A stretch of 64,000 bases of DNA, taken from the IMG/VR virus record IMGVR_UViG_3300009158_000031, positions 1 through 64,000 of that record. One strand, 5' to 3'. The notes beneath the pieces were generated by a model. It ran no database searches, had not been told where the DNA came from, and worked only from the letters and a program-made list of their open reading frames with translations. The position numbers and the translations under genes were made by a program. Shown piece by piece: positions 5,084 to 63,665 of this stretch (positions within the stretch are counted from its first letter, which is position 1; every line of letters begins with the position of its first letter).

Positions 5084-5425
5084 ATGAACAAGCTACCTAC
5101 ATATCAAGAGTTCTTAAATGAATCATTAGTTATCCTTTCTTTGAAAGGTATAATGAAGAATGAATTTATGAACAATATAGAACTTAAGCAAGAGTTCGAA
5201 ACCGCTAGAAGATTATTCTTCGACAATGGTTCATGTTTATTCGATCACATTGAAGGCGATCGATTTACGCTAAGAACGCATTCTACATTCGAAACTTCGG
5301 ATATGGATGCACTCATTACAAAGATCAACGACGAAATTGAAAGGTTTTCTTTCAAGAGAGTCGGTCCGGCTAAAAAGAATATCATTAAAGAAAATCTTTG
5401 GTCTCTTAAAGCCAAACTTAATTGA
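5084..5425 (+). CDS. Putative internal head protein with a capsid-targeting N-terminus
   Basis: MNKLPTYQEFLNE resembles T4 IP MKTYQEFIAE. Late motif AATATATA at 5067-5074. Confidence 0.6.
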   Translation: MNKLPTYQEFLNESLVILSLKGIMKNEFMNNIELKQEFETARRLFFDNGSCLFDHIEGDRFTLRTHSTFETSDMDALITKINDEIERFSFKRVGPAKKNIIKENLWSLKAKLN

Positions 5426-5473
5426 TACTTTTTAATCATTTCATTCATTTAATTATTATTAATCCCACAAAAC

Positions 5474-6184
5474 ATGACAAAATACTTTAAGTATTCTGAC
5501 TTTGAGCAAGCGTTTCTTTGCATTAATGGCGAAATAATTACCAATCCTGAATATCGTTCAACTTCTCGATTAGGTGATATGTTAGAAATTCAAAGTCTTA
5601 CATATGAAGTTGCAGATCCAACAACATATAAATTCACAAACGAAAACATCGGCAGATTAAATTACGATTATGCAGATACATTTTATCAATGGATGATATC
5701 TGGATCTACTGATAATGAAGCACTTCTTAAAGATTATCCTAATGTTGCAAGATTCATGGAAAAACCTAAATCTCCTGATCTTCCAGCAAATTTCAATACA
5801 TTCTATGGTCCTCGTATTCTAGAACAACTACCTCACGTTATCAAAGAACTTAAAGATCATCCTGATACTCGTCGAGCAGTAATTTCTATCCTTGATAAAA
5901 GTGATGTACTTCTTCTCGATAAACCAAATGAAACTCTTGAATTTCCTTGTTGTGATTCTGCAACATTCTCTATTCGTGAAGGTAAGCTGAATATTCACTT
6001 ACATATGCGTTCACAAAATATAGGTCAAGTACTTAAGCTGGATATGTATCTATGGGGTAGATTTCAAACGCAAATTGCTGAAGAATTAGGTTTACCTGTT
6101 GGTAGATTCGTTTCAACTGTAGTTTCTGCTCATGTATTCGAAAAAGATATTGCTTACTTAAATGACTTAATTATTAATTCGTAA
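5474..6184 (+). CDS. Thymidylate-synthase-fold dCMP-modifying enzyme (gp42-like, atypical)
   Basis: Motifs YGPRI, DTRRAV, catalytic PC, MRS and SAH. Asp occupies the cytosine-specificity position (RSQNIGQVLKLD). Confidence 0.85.
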   Translation: MTKYFKYSDFEQAFLCINGEIITNPEYRSTSRLGDMLEIQSLTYEVADPTTYKFTNENIGRLNYDYADTFYQWMISGSTDNEALLKDYPNVARFMEKPKSPDLPANFNTFYGPRILEQLPHVIKELKDHPDTRRAVISILDKSDVLLLDKPNETLEFPCCDSATFSIREGKLNIHLHMRSQNIGQVLKLDMYLWGRFQTQIAEELGLPVGRFVSTVVSAHVFEKDIAYLNDLIINS

Positions 6185-6194
6185 ATCCAAACAA

Positions 6195-7511
6195 ATGAAA
6201 GATAAAAAACTCCAAGTATTCTATGCAGTTCAAGTATCAAACTTTACATTAGTAAATGGCAAACCTAAATGGTTATTGCGAAATGATGCATGCACTAACA
6301 TTGCAATCGGAATCATCTCTACGGTTTTAAAGAGATATCCTGATCAATTCAAATTTTTAATTAAACTTCCTTCTGCTTATGATACAGTAGATGTGGTTCA
6401 ATTAGAAGATCTATTTAAACCAGAATTTCATAAAGATATCGAATTTCTTATTGATGATATCCCTCATTCTCCAGTAACTAGTCGCTATCATTTCGATATG
6501 CAACGATATCTCGTTCATCCTGAATATGCAAAAGCTTTCAGCGAAGTAGATCTTATGATTAATGATGAAAATACATTAACGAAGAATTGGCGAGTACTTT
6601 TCAATGAAATGAAATTAACCATCCCAATCATTTCTACGAATTATTTCCTCGATTCACCTATCGCAAATAAAGTTCCAGAAAAACTTCGTTATTATGAACG
6701 TCAAATGGAATCTTTTATTACATCGGATATTGCTGCATTTCAATGCGAAGCTGGCAGAGTCGAAGCTATGGAAGCTTATGATGTTTTATTTAAGACTCGT
6801 GAGATTCTAGCTCCTCAATCCGTATGGGGTGTTGGTGCACATTATGCCGAAATCGAAGAATATCATACAGATAAAAAATTCGAGATACCTACAATTTACT
6901 TTGGCAATCGTATTTCGGATACTGCAAATCGTTATACTAATTATGATACATTCGCCGAAGCAATTGGTATTCTATCGACTATCACCGATAAACCATTTCG
7001 AGCAGTAATGCTTAATCCAACTCGTAAAGTTACTGCCGATCAATTGAATTTAATTGCAGATCTATCTAAACATCAAGTTGAAGTAATGTCTAACGATGAA
7101 AAATTCACTCGTCAAGATTATCTAACATTCATCAACAAATCTCATATTGCTTGTAACCTATTCGTCACCGAAGTTCATGGTGGTGTTACTCATTGTGAAG
7201 CAATGATGGCTAAGAATATTTTGGTAATGCCTAAAGTAAATAATTACTGGCACAAAATGAAAAAGGCTGGTCATGAAGATTATCCTCTATTCACTGCACT
7301 CGATTCAACGAATTCTCATAAACCAGATGCTCGTGATGTAGCAGAAAAATTGAAGATTGCTCTTAATTATATAGATACTCCTATAGAAAATCAATTAAGA
7401 GAATTATGTCATAATGTCGGTTATAAATACGAATCTTACGAATCTGCTTGTGATCGTATCGTAAATGATATACGTTCGCTTGTTCTTCCTATCTTGAATA
7501 ATAAAAACTAA
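6195..7511 (+). CDS. GT-B glycosyltransferase (GT4/alpha-glucosyltransferase-like)
   Basis: C-terminal donor-binding motif EVHGGVTHCEAMMAKNILVMP and YFGNR. Lies in the modification operon. Confidence 0.7.
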   Translation: MKDKKLQVFYAVQVSNFTLVNGKPKWLLRNDACTNIAIGIISTVLKRYPDQFKFLIKLPSAYDTVDVVQLEDLFKPEFHKDIEFLIDDIPHSPVTSRYHFDMQRYLVHPEYAKAFSEVDLMINDENTLTKNWRVLFNEMKLTIPIISTNYFLDSPIANKVPEKLRYYERQMESFITSDIAAFQCEAGRVEAMEAYDVLFKTREILAPQSVWGVGAHYAEIEEYHTDKKFEIPTIYFGNRISDTANRYTNYDTFAEAIGILSTITDKPFRAVMLNPTRKVTADQLNLIADLSKHQVEVMSNDEKFTRQDYLTFINKSHIACNLFVTEVHGGVTHCEAMMAKNILVMPKVNNYWHKMKKAGHEDYPLFTALDSTNSHKPDARDVAEKLKIALNYIDTPIENQLRELCHNVGYKYESYESACDRIVNDIRSLVLPILNNKN

Positions 7512-7520
7512 TTAACAATT

Positions 7521-7555
7521 TGACGAGGAGTAATCATTTGGTTACTCCTTTGTCA
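7521..7555 (+). other. Intergenic stem-loop (weak terminator or processing site)
   Basis: TGACGAGGAGTAATC-ATTT-GGTTACTCCTTTGTCA inverted repeat. Confidence 0.55.
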
Positions 7556-7571
7556 TATAATAATTAAACAT

Positions 7572-8126
7572 ATGGCAAACTTAATTCTACTTGAAGGCTT
7601 ATCCAGAACAGGCAAATCAACTATTTCAAAATCGATTGCTGATGAATTTGGATTTCGTAATTTCTCCATTAAGACTAAGATGCCGGATTATGTACAAAAT
7701 TTACCTGATTTTTATCATGGTATGCACGTTTTAGCAAATGAATTATTCAGATCTTTTCCCCATGAAACTTTCATCTTAGATAGATCTTTTTTATCTGAGA
7801 TGGTTTATTCTCAATTTTTTAACAGACATTCATATATAAATAACGATCAAGTCATTTGCGATTTACTTCTAGATAACAAGTTTATACTTGTACTTCTAGA
7901 TAACAATCATCAAAATTATTTAGATCGTGGACCAAAAGATAAAATCACTTATTCTGAACAAGAATTTATTAAACAGAAAGATCTTTTCCAATGGCACTTC
8001 CATAATTTCCGTGACAAATACGATCCACAATCATGGCGAGATAGATTTTTACACATTGATACATCAATCACAACTCTAGAAGATACAACAAAACAAATTA
8101 AAACAAAGATAAAACAAGTATTATGA
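7572..8126 (+). CDS. dNMP (thymidylate-kinase-like) kinase
   Basis: P-loop LEGLSRTGKST and the ILDRSFLSE motif. Confidence 0.85.
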   Translation: MANLILLEGLSRTGKSTISKSIADEFGFRNFSIKTKMPDYVQNLPDFYHGMHVLANELFRSFPHETFILDRSFLSEMVYSQFFNRHSYINNDQVICDLLLDNKFILVLLDNNHQNYLDRGPKDKITYSEQEFIKQKDLFQWHFHNFRDKYDPQSWRDRFLHIDTSITTLEDTTKQIKTKIKQVL

Positions 8127-10535: not shown

Positions 10536-10551
10536 TTCATAAAATAATAAA

Positions 10552-11166
10552 ATGAATATATTTGTACTAGATCAAGATCCGAGAATTGCTGCACAAATGC
10601 ATTGTGACAAACATGTTCCAAAAATGATTATCGAACATGCGCAAATGATGACGGCTGCATATTATTCTACTTTAGGTATTAGCCGAAAGAAAGAAATTCC
10701 GGATCAACAATTTGTAGTAAATGAAATGTTTCGCGGTTGGCCTAGAAGAAATGCCGATGGAAGTGAATGGCATTATGCAATATCACATGTCAATCATCCA
10801 TGCACAATTTGGACACGAGCTTCAATCGAGAATTTTAATTGGTTACTAGATTGTACTGAAGAACTTTGTTACGAATTCACTCGTCGTTGGGGTGGTAAAC
10901 ATTCAATCGAAAAGATCGTAGATTGGATGCGTCAAAATCCTCCTAAATTGCCTTCTTCTAAACAAACTCCTTTCGCAATGGCAATGCCGGATTGTTTTAG
11001 AACTACTAATCCGATTGAATCTTATCGTAGATACTATGGCATGAAAACAACTTACATGAAAGTAGCTTGGATTCGAGGAACTCAACCGGATTGGTGGTCA
11101 GATCAATTTGCCAAAGATTGCGTTAATCAATATTATATTGCAAACCCAGCCTTGTTGGTTGGATAA
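10552..11166 (+). CDS. Pyrimidine-dimer DNA glycosylase / endonuclease V-like
   Basis: MNIFVLD...HCDKHVPKMIIEHAQM, HVNHPCTIW, FAMAMPD and ESYRRYY. Confidence 0.85.
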   Translation: MNIFVLDQDPRIAAQMHCDKHVPKMIIEHAQMMTAAYYSTLGISRKKEIPDQQFVVNEMFRGWPRRNADGSEWHYAISHVNHPCTIWTRASIENFNWLLDCTEELCYEFTRRWGGKHSIEKIVDWMRQNPPKLPSSKQTPFAMAMPDCFRTTNPIESYRRYYGMKTTYMKVAWIRGTQPDWWSDQFAKDCVNQYYIANPALLVG

Positions 11167-11185
11167 ATAAAAAAAACCGACACTA

Positions 11186-11791
11186 ATGCGTCTATTAACA
11201 AAAACCGAGTTTGATGCTCTTGTGCTTAATGAATCATATGATGATTACAAGAAAAGCATTAATGAAAATATCAAATATCACATAGAAAATGAGCTAACTA
11301 TATCTGAATCAATATTTAGAGTAGGATCTGAAGCTTATTTAGATTTCGTTAATGAAATGAGAGCACTTTGGAGAGATGGTAAAATATCAATATCCGAAGA
11401 CGATCAATTTATTTTAGAAAAATTATATACTGGCCAAAAAGGAACTTATACCGACCGAGATACTGATCGAAAGAAAACTGTTAATTTTGATGATCCTCAA
11501 TTATCTCCAAAGGAAATTGATACACTCTATTATGTTTATCGTCCATCTCCTTCAGGAGATAAAGATAAAGATACTGGTTTACCAAAAGCTATCATGATTG
11601 GATTTGGTGAAAAAACTGGTCCTGGTGAAGATGATGTTAGAGATAAACATCAGGATCCAGGTAAACGTGCTGGATTTCTAGCTAGACAAAATTGCAAAGA
11701 GAAGAAAGATGAATATGCTTCTGGTTGGTGGTCATGTAACATACATAAATTCTGGAAACAACTAGGACTTAAAACAAACGATCCATGGTAA
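11186..11791 (+). CDS. Putative virion/internal head protein
   Basis: Late motif at 11162, LNE/INE putative cleavage sites, and a C-terminal FLARQNC...GWWSC phage domain. Confidence 0.55.
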   Translation: MRLLTKTEFDALVLNESYDDYKKSINENIKYHIENELTISESIFRVGSEAYLDFVNEMRALWRDGKISISEDDQFILEKLYTGQKGTYTDRDTDRKKTVNFDDPQLSPKEIDTLYYVYRPSPSGDKDKDTGLPKAIMIGFGEKTGPGEDDVRDKHQDPGKRAGFLARQNCKEKKDEYASGWWSCNIHKFWKQLGLKTNDPW

Positions 11792-12114
11792 ATAAAGACT
11801 GTAATTGTAAGAATTGCGAATGCAAAGAAAGAGAATCTTTTTATCTAACATTCGAAGATTATAAACCTTTTACTGATAGTTATTTCAATGGATCTCTTGT
11901 TCGTAAATTTCCTAAAGAGACACCGGCTCATTTACTCAAATGGCATATAGACGATGAAGATCGTACAATATATCCGGTAGAAGAGAATGATTGGAAATTT
12001 CAATTTGATAATAAGTTACCTATCTCGTTTGATAGTAAAATTGAAATTCCTAAGGGAATTCAACATAGAATAATAAAAGGAACCACCGATCTAATCATCT
12101 TAATCGAAAAGTAA
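11785..12114 (+). CDS. Small cupin-like phage protein
   Basis: WHIDDEDR...IPKGIQHRIIKG pattern. Confidence 0.55.
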   Translation: MVNKDCNCKNCECKERESFYLTFEDYKPFTDSYFNGSLVRKFPKETPAHLLKWHIDDEDRTIYPVEENDWKFQFDNKLPISFDSKIEIPKGIQHRIIKGTTDLIILIEK

Positions 12115-12503: not shown

Positions 12504-12538
12504 CCGGAATATATAACTAGAAATAAATTCTTTGAATA

Positions 12539-13090
12539 ATGAATAAACATATACCTTCCTTCAATTCTTTCATAAATGAAGGAAAAGAAATTCCTATTGA
12601 AGTGACTAAAGGTCAAGCTGCCTATTATAAAGGTCTTCCTAAATCTACTGCTCAAAAGAAGAAATCTCAAATCACCGCACAAGCAGAGAAACCTTCAGAT
12701 GATCCTTCAGCATATAAAGCTTTACCTGGAGATAAAAAAGCTCAATCTAAAGGAATAGTTAAAACTTCATCTCATGTGAAAAAATACAAAGAGATGTTTG
12801 GTGAATCTGTTATTAATGAAAAAGAAGAGGAACTTAAAAAAGGACCTATCGAAAACCCAGATATTGAAAAAGCTTTAAAGAATAAGGTAGAAGAAACCGG
12901 AGTAGATTTAGATATACTTCGAGTAGTTATGCGAAGAGGAATGGCTGCTTGGAAAGCTGGTCATCGTCCAGGAGCTACTCAAGAACAATGGGGTTATGCA
13001 AGAATTGCTTCTTTTGTTACTAAAGGACCTACTTACAAATCAACTGACTCAGATATGGCTAAAATCGCAAGAGATAGAGGTCAATTATAA
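12539..13090 (+). CDS. Putative internal head protein (conserved viral RGxAAWxxGHRPGATxxQW domain, possibly DUF5824)
   Basis: N-terminus MNKHIPSFNSFINE and a late motif at 12508. Confidence 0.6.
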   Translation: MNKHIPSFNSFINEGKEIPIEVTKGQAAYYKGLPKSTAQKKKSQITAQAEKPSDDPSAYKALPGDKKAQSKGIVKTSSHVKKYKEMFGESVINEKEEELKKGPIENPDIEKALKNKVEETGVDLDILRVVMRRGMAAWKAGHRPGATQEQWGYARIASFVTKGPTYKSTDSDMAKIARDRGQL

Positions 13091-13123
13091 CTCGAATATA
13101 TAAAATAACAAAAAAATAGAACA

Positions 13124-13639
13124 ATGCAAAAATTCACCGAATTCGTAAAAGCCCGTGAAACTTCTATTGAAGAAAATGCTAAAGCAGAAATTGCCGCAAA
13201 ATTCAATGAATTATACGAAGCAAAATTAAAAGAAATGGGAGCTAAATCTCCTTTAGATCTTACTGAAGAAGATTCTCAAGTTTTCTTTGAATACCTTAAG
13301 AGCTTAAAAGAAGCTGAATTAACTAAAGCTGACGTTAAGAAAGCCGTTAAAGCCGAGACTAAAGGTCTTGAGAAAAAAGTTGATGCTGCTGAAAAGAAAG
13401 CTGAAGCTGCCGAAGATACTGCTAAAGATGCAGAAAAAGATGCAAAGAAAGCTGGTCAAGATGAAGTTACCGATGAAAAATCTTTCAGAGAGTATGCTAC
13501 TAACCTACTTAAAACTGCACATCCTGATGATTTCGATGAGAAAATTGCTAACAAAGTAATTGATGGTATCATCGCTAAAGTTGAAGATGATAATTGGGGT
13601 GAGGCTATTGGCCGTTTAACTTCTGGTCTGGGAGGATAA
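13124..13639 (+). CDS. Putative internal/prohead core protein, charged coiled coil
   Basis: N-terminus MQKFTEFVKARE, K/E/A-rich, late motif at 13095. Confidence 0.55.
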   Translation: MQKFTEFVKARETSIEENAKAEIAAKFNELYEAKLKEMGAKSPLDLTEEDSQVFFEYLKSLKEAELTKADVKKAVKAETKGLEKKVDAAEKKAEAAEDTAKDAEKDAKKAGQDEVTDEKSFREYATNLLKTAHPDDFDEKIANKVIDGIIAKVEDDNWGEAIGRLTSGLGG

Positions 13640-13663
13640 TCAATAATATAAAACAAACACAAT

Positions 13664-14170
13664 ATGAAACATATTAAAACATTTGAAATCTTCGTTAATG
13701 AAGCAGTTAAATTCAATCCAAGAAATCTAGATCAAGGAACTTTCTTTGATTTTATCGATAGTATGGATGCAGAAACTATTGAAGATTATGGAGTTGAAAT
13801 GGATAACATGACTAAAGGTTATGAAGCCGTTGCTAAAGAATTAGGTGGTAATTTAAAAAACGTTAGCTTTGGTGATTCAGAGAATAATGATTATGAATTT
13901 TTTAAATTCTTAATGAATGTTTCTTTAGGAAGCATGGCATTTGATAAAGGAGTTAAACTTCCTGAAGTAAAATCTTTAAAAACTTTTAATATTCCATCAG
14001 GTTGGAGAGACGGTGATAATCAAGCTACATTGGTAGAAATTCCAGGAGTAGCGAATTACGTTACTTGGTTAGATGGTGATGATTTTTCTAATTTTGATTA
14101 TTGTGCTTATAAATCTTCGGATCTTCCCAAGATTGCAAAATGGGCTCAAGAGAATTACGTAGAATCTTAA
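13664..14170 (+). CDS. Putative internal head protein
   Basis: MKHIKTFEIFVNE capsid-targeting-like N-terminus. Confidence 0.6.
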   Translation: MKHIKTFEIFVNEAVKFNPRNLDQGTFFDFIDSMDAETIEDYGVEMDNMTKGYEAVAKELGGNLKNVSFGDSENNDYEFFKFLMNVSLGSMAFDKGVKLPEVKSLKTFNIPSGWRDGDNQATLVEIPGVANYVTWLDGDDFSNFDYCAYKSSDLPKIAKWAQENYVES

Positions 14171-14187
14171 TTCAATTATAACTTATT

Positions 14188-20699: not shown

Positions 20700-20713
20700 C
20701 ATTTAAGTGGAAG

Positions 20714-21149
20714 TGGAGCTGGAGGGAATCGAACCCTCGTCTTGTTCAGCTAATACTAAGAATTCATTTACAGGCTTAGTTTGGTTTATGACACCAACAA
20801 ACTTTTGTGCATTTCGTTTTTCTTGTTGACTTAATGCTCGGTCAAGTTTACTCTTCGGTATAAGCCGAATTTCACAGAACAATTAACAGCGATCTTAATG
20901 GGTTACTGATTGTTCTCGGATGGTACTACTAACCCTTTTTCCCGGTGTGCACATTTTTTTAATATCAGTAAGTGCGACTGATTGGTTAGGCAGCGATAGC
21001 TACTTCACCACCAACGAATGCCATAGCATCTTCGAAGGTAAAAGTTGACGTATTGTCAGTTATTGTTTTGATAGGTAATTTAAGTGTTTCCATCTAACAC
21101 TGCCTGCATTCAAAGAACTACGACTGCCAATCGATGCCTGGTCAGCCCC
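20714..21149 (-). ncRNA. ssrA: tmRNA
   Basis: 5' GGGGCTG pairs with 3' CAGCTCC-A, giving the G3:U Ala identity. T-arm GAGGGTTCGATTCCCTC. Internal tag frame 21057-20986 reads DNTSTFTFEDAMAFVGGEVAIAA*. Confidence 0.95.
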
Positions 21150-21189: not shown

Positions 21190-21218
21190 AAAAAAAGGAG
21201 AGTACGAATACTCTCCTT
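21190..21218 (-). terminator. Rho-independent terminator (UUCG loop)
   Basis: Minus strand AAGGAGAGTA-TTCG-TACTCTCCTT followed by a T run, downstream of the lipoprotein gene. Confidence 0.85.
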
Positions 21219-21240
21219 AATGCGATTGATGTTGGTACAA

Positions 21241-21408
21241 TTACTTAGTAGTAGCAGTATCAACACAAGTGGCTTTGCAAGTGGTATCAACCGAAGTTGA
21301 ATCTGTTGCAACCATCGTAGAATCAGTTGCTGTTGCAGTTGATTCAGGAGCATTTCCACAAGAAGCTAAAGCTACCGTTGCGATTAATGCGAAAATTACG
21401 TTTTTCAT
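21241..21408 (-). CDS. 55-aa lipoprotein (missed by the ORF track)
   Basis: MKNVIFALIATVALAS-CGNAPESTATATDSTMVATDSTSVDTTCKATCVDTATTK*. It has an SPII lipobox (LAS-C) and its own terminator. Confidence 0.85.
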   Translation of the reverse strand: MKNVIFALIATVALASCGNAPESTATATDSTMVATDSTSVDTTCKATCVDTATTK

Positions 21409-35267: not shown

Positions 35268-37043
35268 ATGGCAAAGCTTAACAAGATATTCACACCCAAT
35301 AGGATTGGATACCAACAACTTATTAATGATACATACCTTTACCTGATAGATACTTACTCTCAGGCACAAACTGTATTTTCTAAGGCTTCGCCTTATGGAC
35401 AATTACTTGATGTAATTAATAACTTCTCTCAGCTATTCTTCTTATATTTAGAAGATGCGATAGTGGAAAATAACATATTAACTGCACAGAAACAAAAATC
35501 TATTTATGGATTATCCCGATTAGTTGGGCACAATCCAACTAGAGCACTTTCTGCACAAGGAACTATTCGAGTTAAAATGAAACCTGGTGCTCAATCTGAT
35601 GTTAATGCGTCTTACCTTTTATTTCTTAATAAGAGTAAATTAAATTGCATAAATAATGGATTAGATTATTTTGTCCAAATGGGTAATGCTCTAGGTAATA
35701 CTAAAATAGATTCAAACAATATTGGATTTACTAGTTTTAAATTAATTCAAGGTATATTAGATACGCAAACCGCTATATCTAATGGAGATCCTCTACAAAC
35801 TTATAATTTCCAAACCGATAGACCTATAGAAAACGATATGGTTTATGTTTTTGTTAATGGAGAACCTTTTGATATTAAAGACTCTCTATACGATATGACT
35901 AGAGATCAAAAGCAATGTATGGTTAAAACTGGTGTTGCCGGTGGTATTGACGTTATTTTTGGAAATGAAGATTATGGATACATTCCTCCTTTTGGTAATA
36001 AAATTATGGTTGAATATGTAAAAACTGATGGTTTTCAAGGAAATATTTTTGGAAAAGGTAATTCAATACAATTCAAATGGGCAGATCCTGCATATACTAA
36101 TACCGGAGAAGAAATTGATATTAATGAATTTTTTATAACAGAAATAGAAAAACCTCTTATTTTAGGTGCAGATGAAGAACCGGTAGAATTAACAAAACTA
36201 ATTGCTCCTAAAACTTCTAGATCTTTTGTCCTAGCAAATCCAGACAATTACGTTAATTTACTTTCAAGATTTAATTATTCATATGTGGATGCATATACTA
36301 CAAAAGATGATGGATTCGTTGCAGATGACAATGTGATTTATTTATTTTTGCTACCAGATATTTCTAGAAGATTATCCAAAAATGCAGATTATTTTACAAC
36401 AGATATCAAAAACTTCTATTTAGATACAGATGAAAAAGATGCAATTATTTCATATATTAATCAAAGTGGAAGACAGATAATTTCAACAGAATTAAGTGTT
36501 GTTGATCCGGTTATTAAAAAATATGCGGTAAATGTTTTTCTTAGAGTATTTGATACGGTAGATACAACAACGATTAAAAATGACGTTATCAATCAAATAA
36601 CAAATTACTTAATTAATGTTACTCGAAGAGACAGAGTTCCTAAATCGGATTTGGTTGCTATTATTGAGGCAATTAACGGAGTAGATTCAGTAGATGTAAC
36701 TTTCGTTTCTCAAGAAAATGAAGATGCAATTATTGATGGATTTTATTATAGAGTAGAAAAGACCTCTTCTATAGTTAGATCATTAACAACCGAGACTTTA
36801 AAGAAAATAACGGTTGCACCTGGTCAAAATCCCAATTTAGGATTAGACGAATTTGGTGATATTGTTATCGAACAAAATGAAGTACCTATTATTAGAGGTG
36901 GATGGTATGATCGAAATAATAATTTCTATGAAGAAGGATTAAGTGAAAGAGATTTCTCTTCGGTTAACGTCATCATAAAAAGTGTAATTCCGGAAACTCT
37001 ATCTACTAGAATAACCATGAAAAATAAAGATGCCATTAAATAA
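35268..37043 (+). CDS. Baseplate wedge protein (gp6/baseplate J-like)
   Basis: TAQKQKSIYGLSRLVGHNP, VIFGNEDYGYIP, GADEEP and AINGVDSV. Confidence 0.85.
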   Translation: MAKLNKIFTPNRIGYQQLINDTYLYLIDTYSQAQTVFSKASPYGQLLDVINNFSQLFFLYLEDAIVENNILTAQKQKSIYGLSRLVGHNPTRALSAQGTIRVKMKPGAQSDVNASYLLFLNKSKLNCINNGLDYFVQMGNALGNTKIDSNNIGFTSFKLIQGILDTQTAISNGDPLQTYNFQTDRPIENDMVYVFVNGEPFDIKDSLYDMTRDQKQCMVKTGVAGGIDVIFGNEDYGYIPPFGNKIMVEYVKTDGFQGNIFGKGNSIQFKWADPAYTNTGEEIDINEFFITEIEKPLILGADEEPVELTKLIAPKTSRSFVLANPDNYVNLLSRFNYSYVDAYTTKDDGFVADDNVIYLFLLPDISRRLSKNADYFTTDIKNFYLDTDEKDAIISYINQSGRQIISTELSVVDPVIKKYAVNVFLRVFDTVDTTTIKNDVINQITNYLINVTRRDRVPKSDLVAIIEAINGVDSVDVTFVSQENEDAIIDGFYYRVEKTSSIVRSLTTETLKKITVAPGQNPNLGLDEFGDIVIEQNEVPIIRGGWYDRNNNFYEEGLSERDFSSVNVIIKSVIPETLSTRITMKNKDAIK

Positions 37044-37291
37044 TGTATAAAGACAGTATCTATACGAAGATGTTAAATGAATCTTCTAATTTAAAATATA
37101 AAGGATTTGAGTATCAGAATACAAATATAATGGAAAAATTTGTTTCTAACCGAATGACCGGAAATCCAATAATGGCTGGATTTCTTAAATTACTTAGTCC
37201 AATTTTTATAAATTGGCTAGAATCTGTTAAAAGAGTTCAATTCTTTTACAACTACATAATTGATAAAAACGATAATAGTATAAACCGATAA
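37043..37291 (+). CDS. Small baseplate-associated protein
   Basis: TAATG coupling on both sides. Confidence 0.6.
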   Translation: MYKDSIYTKMLNESSNLKYKGFEYQNTNIMEKFVSNRMTGNPIMAGFLKLLSPIFINWLESVKRVQFFYNYIIDKNDNSINR

Positions 37292-55788: not shown

Positions 55789-55792
55789 GTAA

Positions 55793-58345: not shown

Positions 58346-58362
58346 TAAAAAATTAAAAAATT

Positions 58363-59142: not shown

Positions 59143-59155
59143 ATAATAAACGTAA

Positions 59156-61750
59156 ATGGCTACATCTTCAAAATTTATTTTACTTAATGATGCGGTATTG
59201 ATGGAATACATCTATGCGGATCAGGCTCAAATAAATGTACCAGGGAACGAATTCCGTATCCCTACTACAACTGCACCGTTATGGAAGACTCAAAATCTAC
59301 ATACCGGAGAATATCAAATTCTTAATGATGATGCTTGTGGAATAATTCAGGATGGTCTTCCAGTAGGAACGGCTAATATCCGAAATCATTCATATGCTCA
59401 AATCTCAAGATCTAAAGTTGCAGAATTAGATATTGATCGTATTGTATTCTATAATGATTTCGATACAGATCTTACTTCGTCTGCTAGTTTACCTATCAGT
59501 TTCAACACAGGAAAATCTCCGGTATATGATACTGTCAAATTTCATCTTGTACAAGGATTTAATTTTCAAGGTAATGAAGCTTTTGCGGCATCAATAAAAG
59601 CCAAGAAGAGAAATGGAACTAATCTAATTTTAGCCAATATACTTTATTCTAAATCAGATGCATGGGAAACTCTTAATCCATCATCATTCTTATTTGGTGG
59701 TAGAGTTTATGATTCATATGTAGAAGTAAGAGTTCTTTCTCTTTACAATCTAGTATATGATTATTGGTATACTACACTTAATGGAGATTCAGTTGCTGAA
59801 AAAATTACGGATGGATCCGGTTTTGAACCTTCTCAAAATATACAAATAGATTTTAGATTTTTGAATAATCCAACTTTTGTTGATGGACAAAATTATCTAA
59901 CTTTTTACGAAGGAGTTCAAGCAGAAATACCTACTAAAGATCAATTCGAATCTATTAGTGCTTATATTGCAGAATCTAATGATGGTGATTATATAGAATT
60001 TTATGGAAAATTCAATGGTGATATTATCGAGAATTTTATTCTAGATATTAATGCATCTGGTTATGATTACATGTTACTTCACGATTTAGTCGTTTCTGAA
60101 TATGTTTACGATCAAACTAGTGCAACTTATGCGTGGGTACAAACTGCCGATGTTCAACTTTCACAAGTTGACAATTATGATTTACCCAATACATTTCGTC
60201 CAGTAATTAAGAACACGAATGCAATATCTTTTAAAATAGATTATGTACTTCGACTATATAATAGATCAGATAATTCACAAATTTGGAAAGCCTCATCTAT
60301 GATTTCTAGTAAGGTTAATAAATATGGAAGAGTTCTTAAGGCTATTAATTTAGGTTCAAATCCTATTCAACTTAAAGTATACAATCAATTAGTATCTAAA
60401 GAAATAAATTTACAAAGGGCTTTAGATCCAGTCATTAGCAATGTAAGATATTTGACATCGTTCACCGACAATAACGCTATTTCTATCGCATGGGATAATA
60501 TTACTACTGGTGGAACTGCCACTCAAGGAACTATTCAAAATGTGTTACAAAACGGAACTAATCTGAGAATATATCCTCAAAGTTTAGGAAGAATAATGGT
60601 ATCTAAAGGAACCTCGTATGTACGTTTTACTTTATATCAGACTAAAAATAATGCTAATACAATTCTAGATCTTTCTGGTCTAGGTGATGTTATTTTAGAA
60701 TTTGGATCTAATACTGATGAATCTATTACATTTGATGAATTTCCAACAACGGCAGCCGATAAAGCAAGAGGTCAAGTTGTATTTCGTTTAAATGAAACTC
60801 AATCAACTAATATTCTAGGTTTAAAAAATCGAGAATTTAATCTTTACATACGAAATGAAAAGGGAACTACTGCCGGTTTAACCGGAGTAACTTCTATGGA
60901 AATAACCAATACAGCAGCAGCTAATGATGCATCCTCTAGAGGAGAAAAACAACAACTCTATACTGGTAAATTCTATTCATCTAGCGAATATGCTAAATTA
61001 AAAGAAATTGATAAAATTGAAGATCTTCTAATAACCATTAACGAAAAAAATGGTCAAATCAGTAGACAAGAAACGATTATCGTTGAAAGAAATTCTACCG
61101 TTGTTAACAAAGATAATCAAATTTCATCTCTTAATTCTCAATTAACTAAATCTAATTCAGATTTATCTCAGGCTTTAACAAATAACGCTGCATTAGTAGC
61201 AGCAGATAATATAGAAGACGCTGAATTCAATGCAACAATTGCTTCATTATCAAAACAATTATCTACAATTCAATCCGTAGTAGGACAACAAACTACATTT
61301 ATACAAAATATAAGTAATGAAAAGACTACATTGACTAACGAGAATAATCGTTTGCTAGCTTTAATAAGTACTCTTAATGCAACAATCTCTGCTTTACGAG
61401 CAGTTCCAGTTCAACAACCGATTCAGACTTTTACTCCTATAGAAGTTAGAAACTTTGGAACTTCTAGTAGTATTTCTGCGAATACCAATTTGATAAGCTC
61501 TCCTACTGCAATAACTAGAAATGAAGTAGCAGTATTACCTCCTTCTTCTTCAGTTATATCTAGTCCTGTTCCTAGTTTTGCAGTTACTCCAGTATCAGCT
61601 CCTAGAGTGGTAACGGTTTCTCCGAATGTAATTGCCGCTCCATCGGTAACAATTTCAGTTCCTGCACCTTTCCAAACTGCAATTAAAGGAACTAATGTTA
61701 AAGGAACTAATGTTAAAGGAACTTCATCTAAAGGAACAAATCAACAATAA
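59156..61750 (+). CDS. Structural protein with a C-terminal coiled coil and low-complexity tail
   Basis: 864 aa; ends with KGTNV repeats. Confidence 0.6.
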   Translation: MATSSKFILLNDAVLMEYIYADQAQINVPGNEFRIPTTTAPLWKTQNLHTGEYQILNDDACGIIQDGLPVGTANIRNHSYAQISRSKVAELDIDRIVFYNDFDTDLTSSASLPISFNTGKSPVYDTVKFHLVQGFNFQGNEAFAASIKAKKRNGTNLILANILYSKSDAWETLNPSSFLFGGRVYDSYVEVRVLSLYNLVYDYWYTTLNGDSVAEKITDGSGFEPSQNIQIDFRFLNNPTFVDGQNYLTFYEGVQAEIPTKDQFESISAYIAESNDGDYIEFYGKFNGDIIENFILDINASGYDYMLLHDLVVSEYVYDQTSATYAWVQTADVQLSQVDNYDLPNTFRPVIKNTNAISFKIDYVLRLYNRSDNSQIWKASSMISSKVNKYGRVLKAINLGSNPIQLKVYNQLVSKEINLQRALDPVISNVRYLTSFTDNNAISIAWDNITTGGTATQGTIQNVLQNGTNLRIYPQSLGRIMVSKGTSYVRFTLYQTKNNANTILDLSGLGDVILEFGSNTDESITFDEFPTTAADKARGQVVFRLNETQSTNILGLKNREFNLYIRNEKGTTAGLTGVTSMEITNTAAANDASSRGEKQQLYTGKFYSSSEYAKLKEIDKIEDLLITINEKNGQISRQETIIVERNSTVVNKDNQISSLNSQLTKSNSDLSQALTNNAALVAADNIEDAEFNATIASLSKQLSTIQSVVGQQTTFIQNISNEKTTLTNENNRLLALISTLNATISALRAVPVQQPIQTFTPIEVRNFGTSSSISANTNLISSPTAITRNEVAVLPPSSSVISSPVPSFAVTPVSAPRVVTVSPNVIAAPSVTISVPAPFQTAIKGTNVKGTNVKGTSSKGTNQQ

Positions 61751-62317
61751 ATGATACTTCAAAATAGAAATGATCTTTTTAAAGTTGAGTTACCTAGAAT
61801 ATTCGTACCTCAAGAAATAAAAGATCGATACGCACCATACCTCTTTAGGATGCCAACTCCAGTAACGGATGTGGCCGATATTGTGAATTATTCTATTCAA
61901 TCAATAACTATTCCTAATTTTAATTTTCAACCAATTGAACAGGTTAAGCCTGGTTATTATGCAGAAGCTAAAGGTACTACAAGAAGATTTCGTCAAGCTC
62001 TATCACCAGAGATGTTAATTGATAGAAACTTCACCGTCACATTTCAGCTGTTAGACGGAAATGTTAATTATTGGATATTATTAGAAACATTCTTTCATTA
62101 TTATAGCTTTGATAATCGTAATCCATATACATTTGATGTTCCTATTGGTATATTTGATGCTGAAGGAAATAAGATGTACTCATCAATATTCAAAGATTGT
62201 TTGTTTACCGGAATGAATCAATTCACACTTTCTTATTCAGAATTAACTCCTGAATTTAGAACCTTCGAAGCTACATTTGCATTTAATGAGATAAAATTAG
62301 AATTTGAAACTCAATAA
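61751..62317 (+). CDS. Tail-tube-fold protein (gp3 tail terminator-like)
   Basis: SIQSITIP...FTVTFQL...FKDCLF...FEATFAF pattern of the tube/terminator fold. Confidence 0.55.
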   Translation: MILQNRNDLFKVELPRIFVPQEIKDRYAPYLFRMPTPVTDVADIVNYSIQSITIPNFNFQPIEQVKPGYYAEAKGTTRRFRQALSPEMLIDRNFTVTFQLLDGNVNYWILLETFFHYYSFDNRNPYTFDVPIGIFDAEGNKMYSSIFKDCLFTGMNQFTLSYSELTPEFRTFEATFAFNEIKLEFETQ

Positions 62318-62318
62318 A

Positions 62319-62957
62319 ATGAAATTTTACAAATATCATGAATTTCTAAATGAGGCATCTATTGCATCGGTGATTGATAGAATAGGAAATGAAGAGAATA
62401 TTCAAATTGAAAATATGGATGATTATGTTAATCATTTCATAAATATAGGCGCAAAAAGGATTGCCGGCGGTTCATCTGCTGAAATACTCGAATACCAAGG
62501 TGGAGTTATCAAGATATATGCTCCTATCAATGATCCAGGAATGACTAGATATTTAGCATTTTGTTTATCTAATAAAACGAATTCATATACTCCTAAAATA
62601 GAAAAAATTCTAAAGGTTTGGGCCAATGAAGAAAGATGGATATTTGCAGTATTCATGGAAAATCTAGAAAAACCAAGTGGAGATTTTACCAATGAATTAA
62701 ACATGTATTTAGAAACTCAATTAAAGGGATATCGTTTCGGTAATAATAAAGAGGATACCAACTTTTTTGAAGGTTTAAAATCTATTATAATTAAATATTC
62801 AAAAGATTCAGATAAAAAATCTTTAAACGATATAATTGCATTCCTTAATGGATCAATTGACAAATATCGATATCAGGTAGATTTTGGTCCTCAGAATTGG
62901 ATGATGCGAAGAGGTCAATTAGTTTTAATTGATCCATTTTGGCCAAGTATGGAATAG
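62319..62957 (+). CDS. Ser/Thr protein-kinase-fold protein with a capsid-targeting-like N-terminus
   Basis: Gly loop IAGGSSAEI, VIK lysine, MENL hinge, catalytic DFGPQN and metal-binding LIDP. N-terminus MKFYKYHEFLNE. Confidence 0.75.
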   Translation: MKFYKYHEFLNEASIASVIDRIGNEENIQIENMDDYVNHFINIGAKRIAGGSSAEILEYQGGVIKIYAPINDPGMTRYLAFCLSNKTNSYTPKIEKILKVWANEERWIFAVFMENLEKPSGDFTNELNMYLETQLKGYRFGNNKEDTNFFEGLKSIIIKYSKDSDKKSLNDIIAFLNGSIDKYRYQVDFGPQNWMMRRGQLVLIDPFWPSME

Positions 62958-62994
62958 GATTGAATATATAAATTAATATAAAAACAACAAACTA

Positions 62995-63300
62995 ATGAAT
63001 ATCATTCCAACATTTGATGGATTTATTAACGAAGGAAAGATTTCCATCGGAAAAATGAATTTTTTTGTACGAGTTTTTAACGATGCAAAAGGACTATACG
63101 TACAATTTATACCGGATGGCAAGACTTTAGATAAATTTTCTAAGAATGACATGGTAGAAAATATAAAAGATAAACTAGATTCAGCAATGCCTCAATTTGC
63201 AAGTGCTCTTTGGTTCGCAATTGACAATCAAGCCACAGGAGTAATTTTCAGATTAGACCCATATAAATTAGAAGAAATAATTACAAAAGCTATTAAATAA
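62995..63300 (+). CDS. Putative internal head protein
   Basis: N-terminus MNIIPTFDGFINE; late motif at 62963. Confidence 0.6.
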   Translation: MNIIPTFDGFINEGKISIGKMNFFVRVFNDAKGLYVQFIPDGKTLDKFSKNDMVENIKDKLDSAMPQFASALWFAIDNQATGVIFRLDPYKLEEIITKAIK

Positions 63301-63665
63301 TGAAAACATTCAAAGAATATCTTATTGAAAGTAATACTTTCTCTGAAGAAGAAATCAAAGCACTTAATGAAAATCTTAAGTCTGAATTAACTGAAGCTGA
63401 AGAAGCTAAAATCGATAAAGCTATCAAAGAATTTTGTAGTCAATATCTTGATAAAAACAAGAATATAAAAGAATTTAATGAAGAGCTTACAAATGAAGGT
63501 TTTCTAGGATCTATCCTAGGAGGTCTTACCGGTTTTGCTCTAGGATCTTCGATCGGTAAAATTATTGCAAATGTACTAGGTATTGAGAGAGGCGTAATTT
63601 ACGATTTACTAACAAGTAGACTTGTTGGAGCTGCATTAGGTGCTGCATTAGGAAAACGTGTATGA
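63300..63665 (+). CDS. Putative internal head protein with a glycine-zipper C-terminus
   Basis: N-terminus MKTFKEYLIE; LTNE is followed by GFLGSILGGLTGFALG...VGAALGAALG. Confidence 0.65.
   Translation: MKTFKEYLIESNTFSEEEIKALNENLKSELTEAEEAKIDKAIKEFCSQYLDKNKNIKEFNEELTNEGFLGSILGGLTGFALGSSIGKIIANVLGIERGVIYDLLTSRLVGAALGAALGKRV

What the first reader, a model, noticed from the sequence alone, without database searches (positions are those of the whole stretch)
5084..63665. Dispersed family of genes with a T4-like capsid-targeting N-terminus, suggesting an injected payload set
Unrelated proteins share an N-terminal pattern of roughly K/T-F/Y-x-E/D-F-x-x-E. Examples are 5084 MNKLPTYQEFLNE, 12539 MNKHIPSFNSFINE, 13124 MQKFTEFVKARE, 13664 MKHIKTFEIFVNE, 62319 MKFYKYHEFLNE, 62995 MNIIPTFDGFINE and 63300 MKTFKEYLIE, with weaker cases at 11186 and 14277. 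Known: T4 internal proteins start MKTYQEFIAE and are cut after Glu by gp21. Most of these genes also have their own late motif, even when they sit among early genes. Inference: they form a modular set of packaged, possibly ejected, effectors.
Basis: partly seen in the sequence, partly recalled or inferred. Interest (0 to 1): 0.75.

Follow-up and report, generated by a model that had tools for sequence, protein, structure and literature searches.

The report
Capsid-targeting leader on many jumbo-phage genes
About one gene in eight of this uncultured 254-kb lake phage begins with the same 10-14-residue tag, which closely matches phage T4's capsid-targeting signal, so the phage probably loads dozens of unrelated proteins into its head.

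Summary
The window is the first 64 kb of a 254,393-bp T4-related jumbo phage from lake water. A profile scan of all six frames finds 35 strong copies of M-K-x-I-x-T-[FY]-x-x-F-[LIV]-N-E, and every one sits directly behind a start codon. About 12 looser variants bring the total to roughly 47 of 335 genes. Seven or eight lie in the window. The parts behind the leader are mutually unrelated.

The four best-conserved positions are the four shown by mutagenesis to drive targeting and cleavage of the T4 IPIII capsid targeting sequence. The phage encodes a gp21-type prohead protease, a gp23-type capsid protein, a portal and a gp55-type late sigma factor.

The same leader occurs in a complete 256-kb relative, in the 462-kb phage LR756500, and 245 times around 79 related capsid genes. 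The cultured relative PAU has its own variant on two genes deposited as 'internal capsid protein'. A late-type promoter motif precedes structural genes and a third of the family.

The best reading is a cleaved capsid-targeting propeptide on a fast-changing cargo set. Packaging, cleavage and ejection are inferred, not shown. Gene 14277 is not a member.

The parts
5084..5425 (+). Leader-bearing gene (113 aa). Leader MNKLPTYQEFLNE|S occupies 5084-5122. The mature part has no known domain.
   Evidence: Matrix score 24.9 directly behind the ATG. No Pfam or PHROG match. It lies between an NAD-dependent DNA ligase (3177-5075) and a thymidylate-synthase-like gene (5474-6184).
5068..5075 (+). Late-promoter-like motif ATATATAA (context GAATATATAAC), 16 nt upstream of the 5084 start.
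   Evidence: Promoter matrix score 17.9. The same motif precedes the portal, protease-scaffold, sheath and baseplate genes.
11186..11791 (+). Looser variant member (201 aa), MRLLTKTEFDALVLNE|S. A promoter-like motif lies at 11163-11170.
   Evidence: (motif score 12.3). RNA-library contigs cover 11338-11833 in all four runs laid.
12539..13090 (+). Leader-bearing gene (183 aa). Leader MNKHIPSFNSFINE|G occupies 12539-12580. The mature part carries a DUF5824 domain.
   Evidence: Matrix score 18.9. PF19141 E=1.4e-14. Of its best 120 homologues in metagenomes, 65 reach the strict leader cut-off (matrix 14 bits or more, N-terminal) and most others carry variant leaders. AlphaFold2 gives residues 1-15 pLDDT under 50, detached from the fold. 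Promoter-like motif at 12509-12516, score 20.6.
13124..13639 (+). Looser variant member (171 aa), MQKFTEFVKARE|T. A promoter-like motif lies at 13096-13103.
   Evidence: motif score 21.2. It has the highest RNA-library contig depth of the 6-kb stretch in all four lake metatranscriptomes. One strain shows an in-frame 12-nt insertion.
13664..14170 (+). Leader-bearing gene (168 aa). Leader MKHIKTFEIFVNE|A occupies 13664-13702.
   Evidence: Matrix score 23.4. Weak promoter-like motif at 13646, score 10.0. No domain found. High RNA-library contig depth.
14277..14882 (+).
   Evidence: phrog_415 match over residues 21-179. No [LIV]-x-E site. The G010 homologue starts MAFSTEKILIFDLDD with no leader.
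37043..37291 (+). Possible extra variant member (82 aa) inside the baseplate module: MYKDSIYTKMLNE|SS, with Met in place of Phe at -3.
   Evidence: The spacing is identical to the family (aromatic at position 7, L-N-E at 11-13). Not followed up.
62319..62957 (+). Leader-bearing gene (212 aa). Leader MKFYKYHEFLNE|A occupies 62319-62354. The mature part has a T7 gp0.7-like protein-kinase fold.
   Evidence: Matrix score 21.5. ESM Atlas feature score 0.97 to clusters carrying PF27024 Phage_T7_kinase; structure TM 0.58-0.67 to phage kinase-like clusters. Weak phrog_15752 match.
62995..63300 (+). Leader-bearing gene (101 aa). Leader MNIIPTFDGFINE|G occupies 62995-63033. A promoter-like motif lies at 62964-62971.
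   Evidence: Matrix score 24.1. Promoter score 18.3. The G010 homologue also starts with a leader, MKHTTNFESFINE.
63300..63665 (+). Leader-bearing gene (121 aa) with a T4-length 10-residue leader, MKTFKEYLIE|S (63300-63329).
   Evidence: Matrix score 17.7. The spacing is identical to T4 MKTYQEFIAE.

Best explanation
The shared N-terminus is a capsid-targeting propeptide of the T4 type.

Proposed mechanism:
- A short amphipathic segment presents two aromatic residues, at -6 and -3 from the cleavage Glu. These dock the newly made protein onto the scaffolding core while the prohead assembles.
- The phage's gp21-type (Peptidase_S77) prohead protease is here fused to a coiled-coil scaffold. It then cuts after the invariant Glu of F-[LIV]-N-E, usually before Gly, Ala or Ser.
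- The leader leaves, and the mature protein stays in the head with the DNA.

The tag is portable. It sits on about 35-47 unrelated proteins, roughly 10-14% of the genes. Most have no known domain, but they include these:
- a kinase-like fold (62319);
- a RimK-type ATP-grasp enzyme (109121);
- a PAP2 phosphatase (223447);
- a KTSC protein (222842);
- a DUF5824 protein (12539).

These genes carry their own late-type promoter motif or lie in arrays behind late structural operons. The cargo set turns over quickly between related phages while the tag stays.

Shown:
- the motif, its position, its enrichment and its spread across the clade;
- its match to the T4 CTS determinants;
- the presence of the T4-type head and late-transcription genes;
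- the promoter-motif association.

Inferred: binding to the core, cleavage, retention in the virion and ejection into the host.
For: 1. Position and enrichment. There are 35 matrix hits, all N-terminal. Positional enrichment appears without assuming any motif.

2. The mature parts are unrelated. Synonymous codons vary at the conserved residues; pairwise identity is 0.63 and 0.70 at codon positions 1 and 2 against 0.46 at position 3. Selection therefore acts on the peptide.

3. Match to T4. The CTS is MKTYQEFIAE. It scores 16.1 bits on this phage's leader matrix, which 1 of 69,956 internal nine-mers reaches. The conserved positions equal T4 IPIII residues 4 and 7 (targeting) and 8 and 10 (processing). 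An independent set gives the same picture: 120 homologues of the 12539 protein, picked by whole-protein similarity, show 88% aromatic, 99% F/Y/W, 92% L/I/V and 91% Glu, with a variable P2.

4. Machinery in the same genome:
- PF03420 protease at 101682-103583;
- PF07068 capsid protein at 103692-105302;
- portal, gp2-like, gp4-like and gp55-like late sigma, plus sheath and tube.

5. Candidate cleavage sites of the same form in head proteins:
- R-V-N-E|A at the end of the protease domain, conserved in G000, G010 and LR756500;
- x-[LIFM]-[IL]-N-E at the capsid-protein N-terminus in all 79 IMG/VR relatives examined;
- [LIVF]NE is more enriched in the protease-scaffold protein than in any other protein of the genome: 8 against 1.1 expected, p=2e-5.

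6. Clade-wide spread:
- the complete relative G010 has 19 leader genes, one of them between portal and protease;
- LR756500 has 13;
- 245 leader-type N-termini lie on the gene strand against 3 on the opposite strand in 1.23 Mb around related capsid genes;
- 165 of 176 matrix hits in 80 other IMG/VR loci are N-terminal.

7. The cultured relative PAU:
- a variant leader, MK[ST][IL][ST]xLYExKLNE|[AS], on at least 7 genes;
- two of these, gp142 and gp154, are deposited as 'internal capsid protein';
- the PAU mature capsid protein, by N-terminal sequencing, is 520 of 585 aa (PMC5646251), within one residue of L-M-E64|N.

8. Cargo behaviour:
- where a cargo has a G010 homologue, it usually keeps a leader or leader-like N-terminus (5 of 8 score 11.5 or more on the leader matrix, 3 score 10 or less), while two excluded enzymes (5474, 14277) have leaderless homologues;
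- in the phages HTVC008M and Melnitz, the DUF5824 domain lies within proteins of about 600 aa, near the C-terminal end in HTVC008M, and the match does not include a leader.

9. Promoter motif. GA[AT]ATATAA[AT]A lies 23-32 nt upstream of the portal, protease, sheath and baseplate genes. It precedes 16 of 47 family members against 28 of 281 other genes (p=6e-5). It occurs 56 times on the + strand and 5 times on the - strand.

10. Transcription. In four lake metatranscriptomes, contigs cover the leader genes at 12.5-14.2 kb most deeply. The flanking metabolic genes are covered little or not at all.
Against: - There is no direct evidence that any of these proteins is in a virion or is cleaved.
- The mature parts are not basic (median pI 6.4, no different from other proteins), unlike T4 IPI-III.
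- 35-47 cargo species would be far more than T4's handful.
- The [LIVF]NE enrichment in the scaffold was not reproduced in G010, which has one site.
- P2 of the leaders drifts to Ala, Ser or Thr in the more distant clade while the capsid-protein site keeps Asn. A hoped-for co-variation is therefore absent.
- The protease-leader complex prediction gave no answer.
- The basis of PAU's 'internal capsid protein' annotation could not be traced.
- Metatranscriptome contig depth is a poor measure of expression, and RNA libraries can hold DNA.
- Gene calls are my own crude ORF calls.
Confidence: 0.72

Rival explanations
1. The leader is only a recognition and cleavage tag for the phage protease: activation of proproteins, or timed destruction. 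The proteins are not retained in the capsid or delivered to the host.
For: The conserved P3-P1 residues and the small P1' residue fit a protease site. Similar x-N-E sites occur in the scaffold, which in T4 is degraded and expelled.
Against: In T4, gp21 cuts the core and shell proteins after the shell has assembled around the core, so cleavage implies prior targeting. The two aromatic positions, which in T4 serve targeting rather than processing, are as conserved as the cleavage residues. There is a single site followed by a folded domain, not the multiple sites expected for destruction.
Confidence: 0.1
2. The conserved start is a feature of translation or the mRNA: an A-rich, unstructured initiation region suited to hosts that do not use Shine-Dalgarno pairing. 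Alternatively it is a general N-terminal stability element with no sorting role.
For: Some codon preferences go beyond the amino acid: ACA for Thr in 18 of 19 cases, ATA for Ile, and AAA. Upstream regions lack an obvious ribosome-binding site.
Against: Conservation is strongest at codon positions 1 and 2. Phe, Asn, Glu and Leu/Ile/Val use mixed synonymous codons near genomic proportions. Structural genes such as the capsid protein, sheath and portal lack the leader. The motif matches the T4 CTS residue for residue, although T4's host does use Shine-Dalgarno sites.
Confidence: 0.05
3. The shared 5' ends are recombination handles that let gene cassettes be swapped between phages. The peptide itself is incidental.
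For: Cargo content differs greatly between relatives: about 8 of the 47 G000 members have a G010 homologue. The four genes at 133186-134528 share near-identical leader codons. The genes sit in arrays.
Against: Mean pairwise nucleotide identity of the leaders is only 0.59 over 33 nt, too low and too short for efficient homologous exchange in general. The peptide is conserved across phages whose capsid proteins are only 52-56% identical, and the leader DNA of one relative shown (LR756500) uses different codons. This role could coexist with targeting; it does not replace it.
Confidence: 0.04
4. The tag sorts proteins to some other destination, such as the tail or baseplate lumen, the cell membrane or a phage-made compartment, rather than the capsid interior.
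For: Several members flank tail and baseplate modules: 62319-63665 follows the tail-fibre/baseplate block, the 133-137 kb array follows sheath and tube, and 37043 lies inside the baseplate module.
Against: The leader has no hydrophobic signal-peptide core, and the family is more hydrophilic than average. The closest functional precedent, and the protease needed to use the Glu site, are head-specific. In G010 and PAU, leader genes lie within the portal-protease-capsid block.
Confidence: 0.07

Closest known systems
Capsid targeting sequence (CTS) of phage T4 internal proteins IPII/IPIII (MKTYQEFIAE, cut by gp21)
   Same: - It is an N-terminal propeptide of about 10 residues on otherwise unrelated proteins.
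- It has the same pattern: K-T-aromatic-x-E-F-aliphatic-x-E.
- It has the same four key positions.
- The phage encodes gp20-, gp21- and gp23-type head genes and a gp55-type late sigma factor.
- Gene 63300 in the window even has the T4 length.
   Different: - Here the leader is usually 13-14 residues (MK-x-I added in front), and P2 is mostly Asn.
- About 35-47 genes per genome carry it, against two N-terminal exact-pattern matches in ipII and ipIII of T4, plus the CTS-like gp61.1.
- The cargo is not basic and includes enzyme-like folds.
- The protease is fused to the scaffold.
Long propeptides of head and ejection proteins in phiKZ, 201phi2-1 and SPN3US (cleaved at S/A/G-x-E by a gp21-related protease)
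   Same: These are jumbo phages with many internal head proteins. The proteins are processed after Glu by a T4-related prohead protease, and their propeptides are thought to act in targeting.
   Different: Most of those propeptides are far longer than T4's 10-20 residues (four in SPN3US exceed 100), only about 8-19 proteins are processed, and no single short leader is shared across unrelated proteins. Here one short consensus tags dozens.
'Internal capsid proteins' gp142 and gp154 of Sphingomonas (Sphingobacterium) phage PAU, JQ362498
   Same: PAU belongs to the same broad clade (capsid protein about 33% identical). Both proteins start with a leader ending K-L-N-E|A. Further PAU genes around the portal-protease-scaffold-capsid block share it.
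   Different: The consensus differs (L-Y-E-x-K-L-N-E rather than F-x-x-F-L-N-E), and only about 7-10 genes carry it. The basis of the deposited annotation is unknown to me.

Membership tests
T4-type capsid targeting sequence (CTS) propeptide | Sits at the extreme N-terminus, about 10-20 residues, directly behind the initiator Met | tested here: met
   All 35 strong hits start 3-5 residues behind an ATG. One hit of 15 bits or more lies elsewhere in the six frames.
T4-type capsid targeting sequence (CTS) propeptide | Aromatic residues equivalent to IPIII Tyr4 and Phe7 (targeting determinants) | tested here: met
   In the seed set, which was picked with a pattern that requires these residues, position -6 is F or Y in 33 of 33 and position -3 is F, W or Y in 33 of 33. 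In the independent homologue set the figures are 88% and 99%. The T4 data come from PMC9026906.
T4-type capsid targeting sequence (CTS) propeptide | Aliphatic P3 and Glu P1 (processing determinants; gp21 cuts after [L/I]-x-E) | tested here: met
   Position -2 is L/I/V in 92-100% and position 0 is Glu in 91-100%. P1' is mostly G, A or S.
T4-type capsid targeting sequence (CTS) propeptide | The phage encodes a gp21-type prohead protease and a gp23-type shell that assembles on a scaffolding core | tested here: met
   PF03420 at 50.7 bits and PF07068 at 124 bits, both above the curated cut-offs. The portal is phrog_213. A coiled-coil region follows the protease domain.
T4-type capsid targeting sequence (CTS) propeptide | The same tag is carried by mutually unrelated mature proteins | tested here: met
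   BLASTP of the mature parts finds two weak pairs among 49. The Pfam content is diverse.
T4-type capsid targeting sequence (CTS) propeptide | The tag is necessary and sufficient for incorporation into the prohead | not testable with these tools
   This needs fusion and packaging experiments. The complex prediction gave no answer.
T4-type capsid targeting sequence (CTS) propeptide | The tag is removed after Glu in mature virions | not testable with these tools
   No virion proteome exists for this phage or its leader-bearing relatives. The only indirect datum is the PAU capsid protein: 520 of 585 aa by N-terminal sequencing, within one residue of L-M-E64.
T4 internal proteins IPI-IPIII (the proteins, not the tag) | Small, highly basic, DNA-associated mature proteins | tested here: not met
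   Median pI of the mature parts is 6.4, ranging from 4.3 to 9.6, and does not differ from the other proteins (p=0.96). No sequence similarity to ipII or ipIII beyond the leader was seen, but this was not specifically tested.
phiKZ/SPN3US-type head-protein propeptides | Long propeptides (mostly far longer than T4's 10-20 residues; four in SPN3US exceed 100) cut at S/A/G-x-E | tested here: not met
   The leaders are 10-16 residues, and P3 is L/I/V rather than S/A/G.
Sec or lipoprotein signal peptides | Positively charged N-region, hydrophobic core of 10-15 residues, A-x-A site or lipobox | tested here: not met
   The leader is acidic and amphipathic, with no hydrophobic run. Only one family member has any membrane-like segment.

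The most novel reading that the evidence does not exclude
A whole clade of uncultured jumbo phages, mostly from freshwater and probably infecting Bacteroidota, uses one short peptide 'address label' that can be read from sequence. More than 583 related capsid genes are in IMG/VR. With this label each phage loads 10-14% of its gene products into the capsid. The injected proteome of these phages could then be predicted from metagenomes alone. It turns over almost completely between relatives, as expected for an arms-race payload of host-takeover or anti-defence enzymes (kinase-like, ATP-grasp, phosphatase). The tag would also be a ready-made packaging handle for engineering such phages.
Probability: 0.55. 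Interest if true: 0.82.

Novelty: new variant of a known kind. Interest (0 to 1): 0.72.

Why it matters
The T4 CTS is a textbook curiosity attached to a few internal proteins, and it is used as a tool to pack foreign proteins into T4 heads.

Here a recognisably homologous tag sits on dozens of unrelated genes per genome, across hundreds of uncultured jumbo-phage contigs. If the tag works as it does in T4, three things follow.

- A large block of hypothetical proteins becomes a defined functional class: capsid cargo, likely delivered with the DNA.
- Which proteins jumbo phages bring into the cell becomes a directly testable question.
- It may help explain what large capsids and genomes are used for.

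It also offers a simple bioinformatic rule for finding candidate early-acting effectors and anti-defence proteins in metagenomes. My six full-text searches found no description of this expansion. That is a limited search, not proof of absence.

Tried and rejected
- Megablast of the structural region against INPHARED found no match, so there is no close cultured relative.
- Complex prediction of the protease domain (residues 1-175) with a 30-residue leader peptide returned 'no answer'. I do not use it as evidence either way.
- I expected P2 of the leaders and P2 of the capsid-protein N-terminal site to co-vary across 79 relatives. They do not. The capsid-protein site stays I/L-N-E while the leaders drift to Ala, Ser or Thr in the 52-56% identity clade.
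- The [LIVF]NE enrichment in the scaffold is significant in G000 but not reproduced in G010.
- I expected the cargo to be basic like T4's internal proteins. It is not.
- I looked for the same leader in Tenacibaculum PTm1 (none), pT24 and Lak-A1 (background level), and Pelagibacter HTVC008M and Methylophilales Melnitz (background level). The expansion is therefore specific to one subclade, and PAU has its own variant.
- NCBI-sourced homologues carried no organism names.
- I first listed 5474 (thymidylate synthase) and 14277 (PNK-like) as weak members, then excluded them.
- Paralogy as the explanation is rejected, because the mature parts are unrelated.
- I could not trace why PAU gp142 and gp154 were deposited as 'internal capsid protein'.

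Full report
WHAT THE WINDOW IS. The 64-kb window is the first quarter of a single 254,393-bp virus record from IMG/VR. It is linear, CheckV estimates it 83% complete, its GC content is 33%, and nearly all genes lie on the + strand. The genome encodes:
- a T4 gp21-type prohead protease (PF03420, 50.7 bits) at 101682-103583, as the N-terminal domain of a 633-aa protein whose remainder looks like a coiled-coil scaffold;
- a gp23-type major capsid protein at 103692-105302 (PF07068, 124 bits);
- a portal, gp2-like and gp4-like proteins, a gp55-like late sigma factor, and a tail sheath and tube.

The window from about 18 to 62 kb is the tail-fibre and baseplate module. By capsid protein, the nearest records are these:
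- the 462-kb uncultured phage LR756500 (54% identity);
- the Lak megaphages (40%);
- Tenacibaculum phages pT24 and PTm1, and 'Sphingomonas' phage PAU (about 33%).

PAU's host is really a Sphingobacterium (PMC3738902). Near-identical DNA is present in lake-water metatranscriptome libraries.

THE OBSERVATION. A crude ORF call of the whole genome shows the same start on gene after gene. I built a nine-column matrix ending at the Glu and scanned all six frames. It gave 35 hits of 16 bits or more. All are on the + strand and all lie 3-5 residues behind an ATG. Only one hit of 15 bits or more lies elsewhere. The scan also corrected two of my gene starts (185434 and 219667) and found one short gene I had missed (77976).

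The seed set was picked with a regular expression, so I repeated the test with no motif at all. Over all 334 ORFs:
- position 7 is aromatic in 61 (35 expected);
- position 10 is Phe in 42 (16 expected, p=2e-8);
- position 11 is L/I/V in 118 (71 expected, p=2e-9);
- position 13 is Glu in 51 (22 expected, p=2e-8).

The consensus is M-K-x-I-x-T-[FY]-x-[ED]-F-[LIV]-N-E, followed mostly by Gly, Ala or Ser. About a dozen further genes carry looser versions with one to three extra residues before the N-E. Examples are MKLLNFNEFITHLNE, MLKFNQFVNLILNE and MRLLTKTEFDALVLNE.

In the window the members are 5084, 12539, 13664, 62319, 62995 and 63300 (strong), and 11186 and 13124 (variants). Gene 37043 is a possible extra member. 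Gene 14277 is a PNK/HAD-like enzyme and not a member.

NOT A PARALOGOUS FAMILY. With the leader removed, an all-against-all BLASTP finds only two weak pairs among 49 proteins. Domain content is diverse and mostly empty:
- RimK-type ATP-grasp plus a Zn-protease-like region (109121);
- PAP2 (223447);
- KTSC (222842);
- DUF5824 (12539);
- a sub-threshold NleE-like match (218420);
- GT2 and DUF5856 on two variant members;
- a T7 gp0.7-like kinase fold for 62319.

Synonymous codons vary at the conserved residues. Pairwise identity of the leaders is 0.63 and 0.70 at codon positions 1 and 2 against 0.46 at position 3, so the peptide is what is conserved. There is still some excess of ACA, ATA and TTC codons. 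An AlphaFold2 model of the 12539 protein, built on 54 sequences, gives the first 15 residues pLDDT below 50 with a short helix at 8-12. The leader is therefore a detached appendage, not part of the fold.

THE LINK TO T4. Translating the T4 record gives ipII and ipIII = MKTYQEFIAE|A. The literature states that this 10-residue capsid targeting sequence (CTS) is cut once and leaves, and that anything fused to it is packaged (PMC8442874; PMC5694885). Amber-suppressor mutagenesis of IPIII placed targeting at residues 4 and 7 and processing at residues 8 and 10 (PMC9026906). Aligned on the Glu, these are exactly the four best-conserved positions here.

The same holds in a set chosen independently of the leader. 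Among the best 120 database homologues of the 12539 protein, those columns are 88% F/Y, 99% F/Y/W, 92% L/I/V and 91% Glu. The position between them and the Glu (P2) varies, as in T4's L/I-x-E rule. The T4 nine-mer scores 16.1 bits on this phage's matrix. Only 1 of 69,956 internal nine-mers of this proteome does as well, and that one is a mis-called true start. Gene 63300 (MKTFKEYLIE|S) even has the T4 length.

SITES OF THE SAME FORM IN HEAD PROTEINS.
- The tripeptide [LIVF]-N-E is more enriched in the protease-scaffold protein than in any other protein of the genome: 8 against 1.1 expected, p=2e-5.
- R-V-N-E|A at the end of the protease domain is conserved in G000, G010 and LR756500.
- The capsid protein begins M-Y-L-I-N-E|S. 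An x-[LIFM]-[IL]-N-E element within the first nine residues is present in all 79 IMG/VR relatives examined, at 52-100% identity.
- In the cultured relative PAU, the mature capsid protein was reported from N-terminal sequencing as 520 of 585 residues (PMC5646251, Table 1). That is within one residue of L-M-E64|N. G000 has L-Y-E42|N at the corresponding place.

These sites fit a T4-like specificity, but none has been shown to be cut in this phage. The scaffold enrichment is not reproduced in G010.

SPREAD.
In 80 loci, 165 of 176 matrix hits are N-terminal, and one 12.5-kb stretch carries 14 leader genes.
- CheckV rates the contigs tested as 20-54% complete at 40-150 kb, so they are pieces of jumbo genomes. 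The one complete record, G010 (256,444 bp with terminal repeats), has the S77 protease and 19 leader genes. One of these sits between portal and protease.
- LR756500 has 13 leader genes.
- Around 79 related capsid genes (1.23 Mb), there are 245 leader-type N-termini on the gene strand and 3 on the opposite strand.
- PTm1 has none. pT24, Lak-A1, HTVC008M and Melnitz are at background level.
- PAU has its own version, MK[ST][IL][ST]xLYExKLNE|[AS], on at least seven genes. They include gp142 and gp154, both deposited as 'internal capsid protein'. Related starts (MKTL[TV]QL[YF]E) occur on gp149, gp150 and the annotated scaffold gp152. I could not find the basis of that annotation.

MODULARITY AND TURNOVER. 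Only about 8 of G000's members have a homologue in G010. Those homologues usually keep a leader or a leader-like N-terminus: 5 of 8 score 11.5 or more on the leader matrix and 3 score 10 or less. The two excluded enzymes, 5474 and 14277, have leaderless homologues. In HTVC008M and Melnitz the DUF5824 domain lies within proteins of about 600 aa, near the C-terminal end in HTVC008M, and the match does not include a leader.

EXPRESSION SIGNALS.
- A motif GA[AT]ATATAA[AT]A lies 23-32 nt upstream of the start codons of the portal, protease-scaffold, sheath and several baseplate genes. It occurs 56 times on the + strand against 5 on the - strand.
- With a gp55-like sigma factor in the genome, it is a reasonable late-promoter candidate. 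T4's late promoter is TATAAATA; I state that from general knowledge.
- The motif precedes 16 of 47 family members against 28 of 281 other genes (p=6e-5).
- In the first 18 kb of the window, the neighbours of the leader genes are the DNA ligase, thymidylate-synthase-like, epimerase, HhH-GPD, dCMP deaminase and NDK genes. There the motif precedes 5 of 5 leader genes against 1 of 19 others (p=1.4e-4).
- Most other members sit in arrays directly behind late operons. Ten follow the sheath and tube, and five lie between gp55 and the gp4/gp2/portal block.
- In four lake metatranscriptome libraries, assembled contigs cover 12.5-14.2 kb (three leader genes) at the highest depth. They cover the flanking metabolic genes little or not at all. 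One strain has an in-frame 12-nt insertion in 13124.
- The tool warns that such depth is a poor measure of expression and that DNA can be present. I take this only as showing uneven, leader-gene-centred representation.

MECHANISM AND RIVALS. The most likely reading (0.72) is a T4-type capsid-targeting propeptide on a large, fast-changing cargo set. The leader docks on the scaffolding core through the two aromatic residues. The prohead protease cuts it after Glu, and the mature protein stays in the head. Ejection into the host follows by analogy with T4's internal proteins and Alt, and is the weakest link. The rivals are these:
- a cleavage-only tag (0.10);
- sorting to another destination (0.07);
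- a translation or mRNA element (0.05);
- recombination handles (0.04).
Each is argued in the rivals section. The points against the main reading are the lack of any proteomic evidence, the non-basic cargo, the unprecedented number of cargo species, and the negative or absent results listed under 'tried and rejected'.

NOVELTY. The kind is known (the T4 CTS). T4-even relatives are known to carry other CTS-bearing internal proteins (PMC3012670; PMC9026906). New here are the extended 13-residue form with Asn at P2, its presence on 10-14% of all genes including enzyme-like proteins, and its conservation across a large uncultured jumbo-phage clade. My literature searches found no report of this.

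Noticed in passing
window 20711-21149 (- strand): A phage-encoded tmRNA: Rfam RF00023, 85.6 bits, E=1.4e-33, full-length model match. ARAGORN did not call it.
   Followed up: partly
window 21241-21408 (- strand): A 55-aa minus-strand ORF with a lipoprotein-like signal (hydrophobic run followed by Cys). A G+C-rich hairpin with a T-run follows at about 21190-21220. It is one of very few minus-strand genes in the genome.
   Followed up: no
T4 record NC_000866 18966-19130 (locus L195): T4 gp61.1, a 54-aa hypothetical protein next to the primase gene, starts MKTFKEFIKE|D. It scores 18.2 bits on this phage's leader matrix, above ipII/ipIII (16.1), so it may be an unrecognised CTS-bearing T4 protein.
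   Followed up: partly
G000 106061-108646 (locus L006:6061-8646), outside the window: An 861-aa Lys/Ala/Glu-rich protein, two genes downstream of the capsid gene (after 105418-106041), ENDS in ...EYQFLINE. That is a leader-like motif at the extreme C-terminus. It also has TLFSEFVLNISE near its N-terminus. LR756500 has an ORF ending ...YDNFLNEK. The meaning is unknown; it may be a product mimic or a core-binding element.
   Followed up: no
PAU record JQ362498 110719-113735 (locus L222): In PAU, the annotated scaffolding protein gp152 and the small proteins gp149 and gp150, between portal and protease, begin with the same MKTL[TV]QL[YF]E segment as the leader-bearing 'internal capsid proteins'. 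This hints that the leader imitates the scaffold's own N-terminus.
   Followed up: partly
window 62319-62957: This cargo has a protein-kinase-like fold resembling T7 gp0.7 (ESM Atlas feature score 0.97; structure TM 0.58-0.67).
   Followed up: partly
window 13429: One lake strain carries an in-frame 12-nt insertion in gene 13124-13639. The insertion and many point differences keep the frame open.
   Followed up: no
loci L191 (HTVC008M) and L192 (Melnitz): The DUF5824 domain stands alone behind a leader in this phage. In T4-like pelagiphage and methylophage genomes it lies within 597-650-aa proteins, near the C-terminal end in HTVC008M (where the protein is annotated as a cytidyltransferase).
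   Followed up: partly
G000 218420-218818 (locus L013:8420-8815), outside the window: The mature part of this leader-bearing protein gives a sub-threshold match to PF20798, the NleE cysteine methyltransferase effector (22.9 bits against a cut-off of 27, E=7e-5), over nearly its whole length.
   Followed up: no
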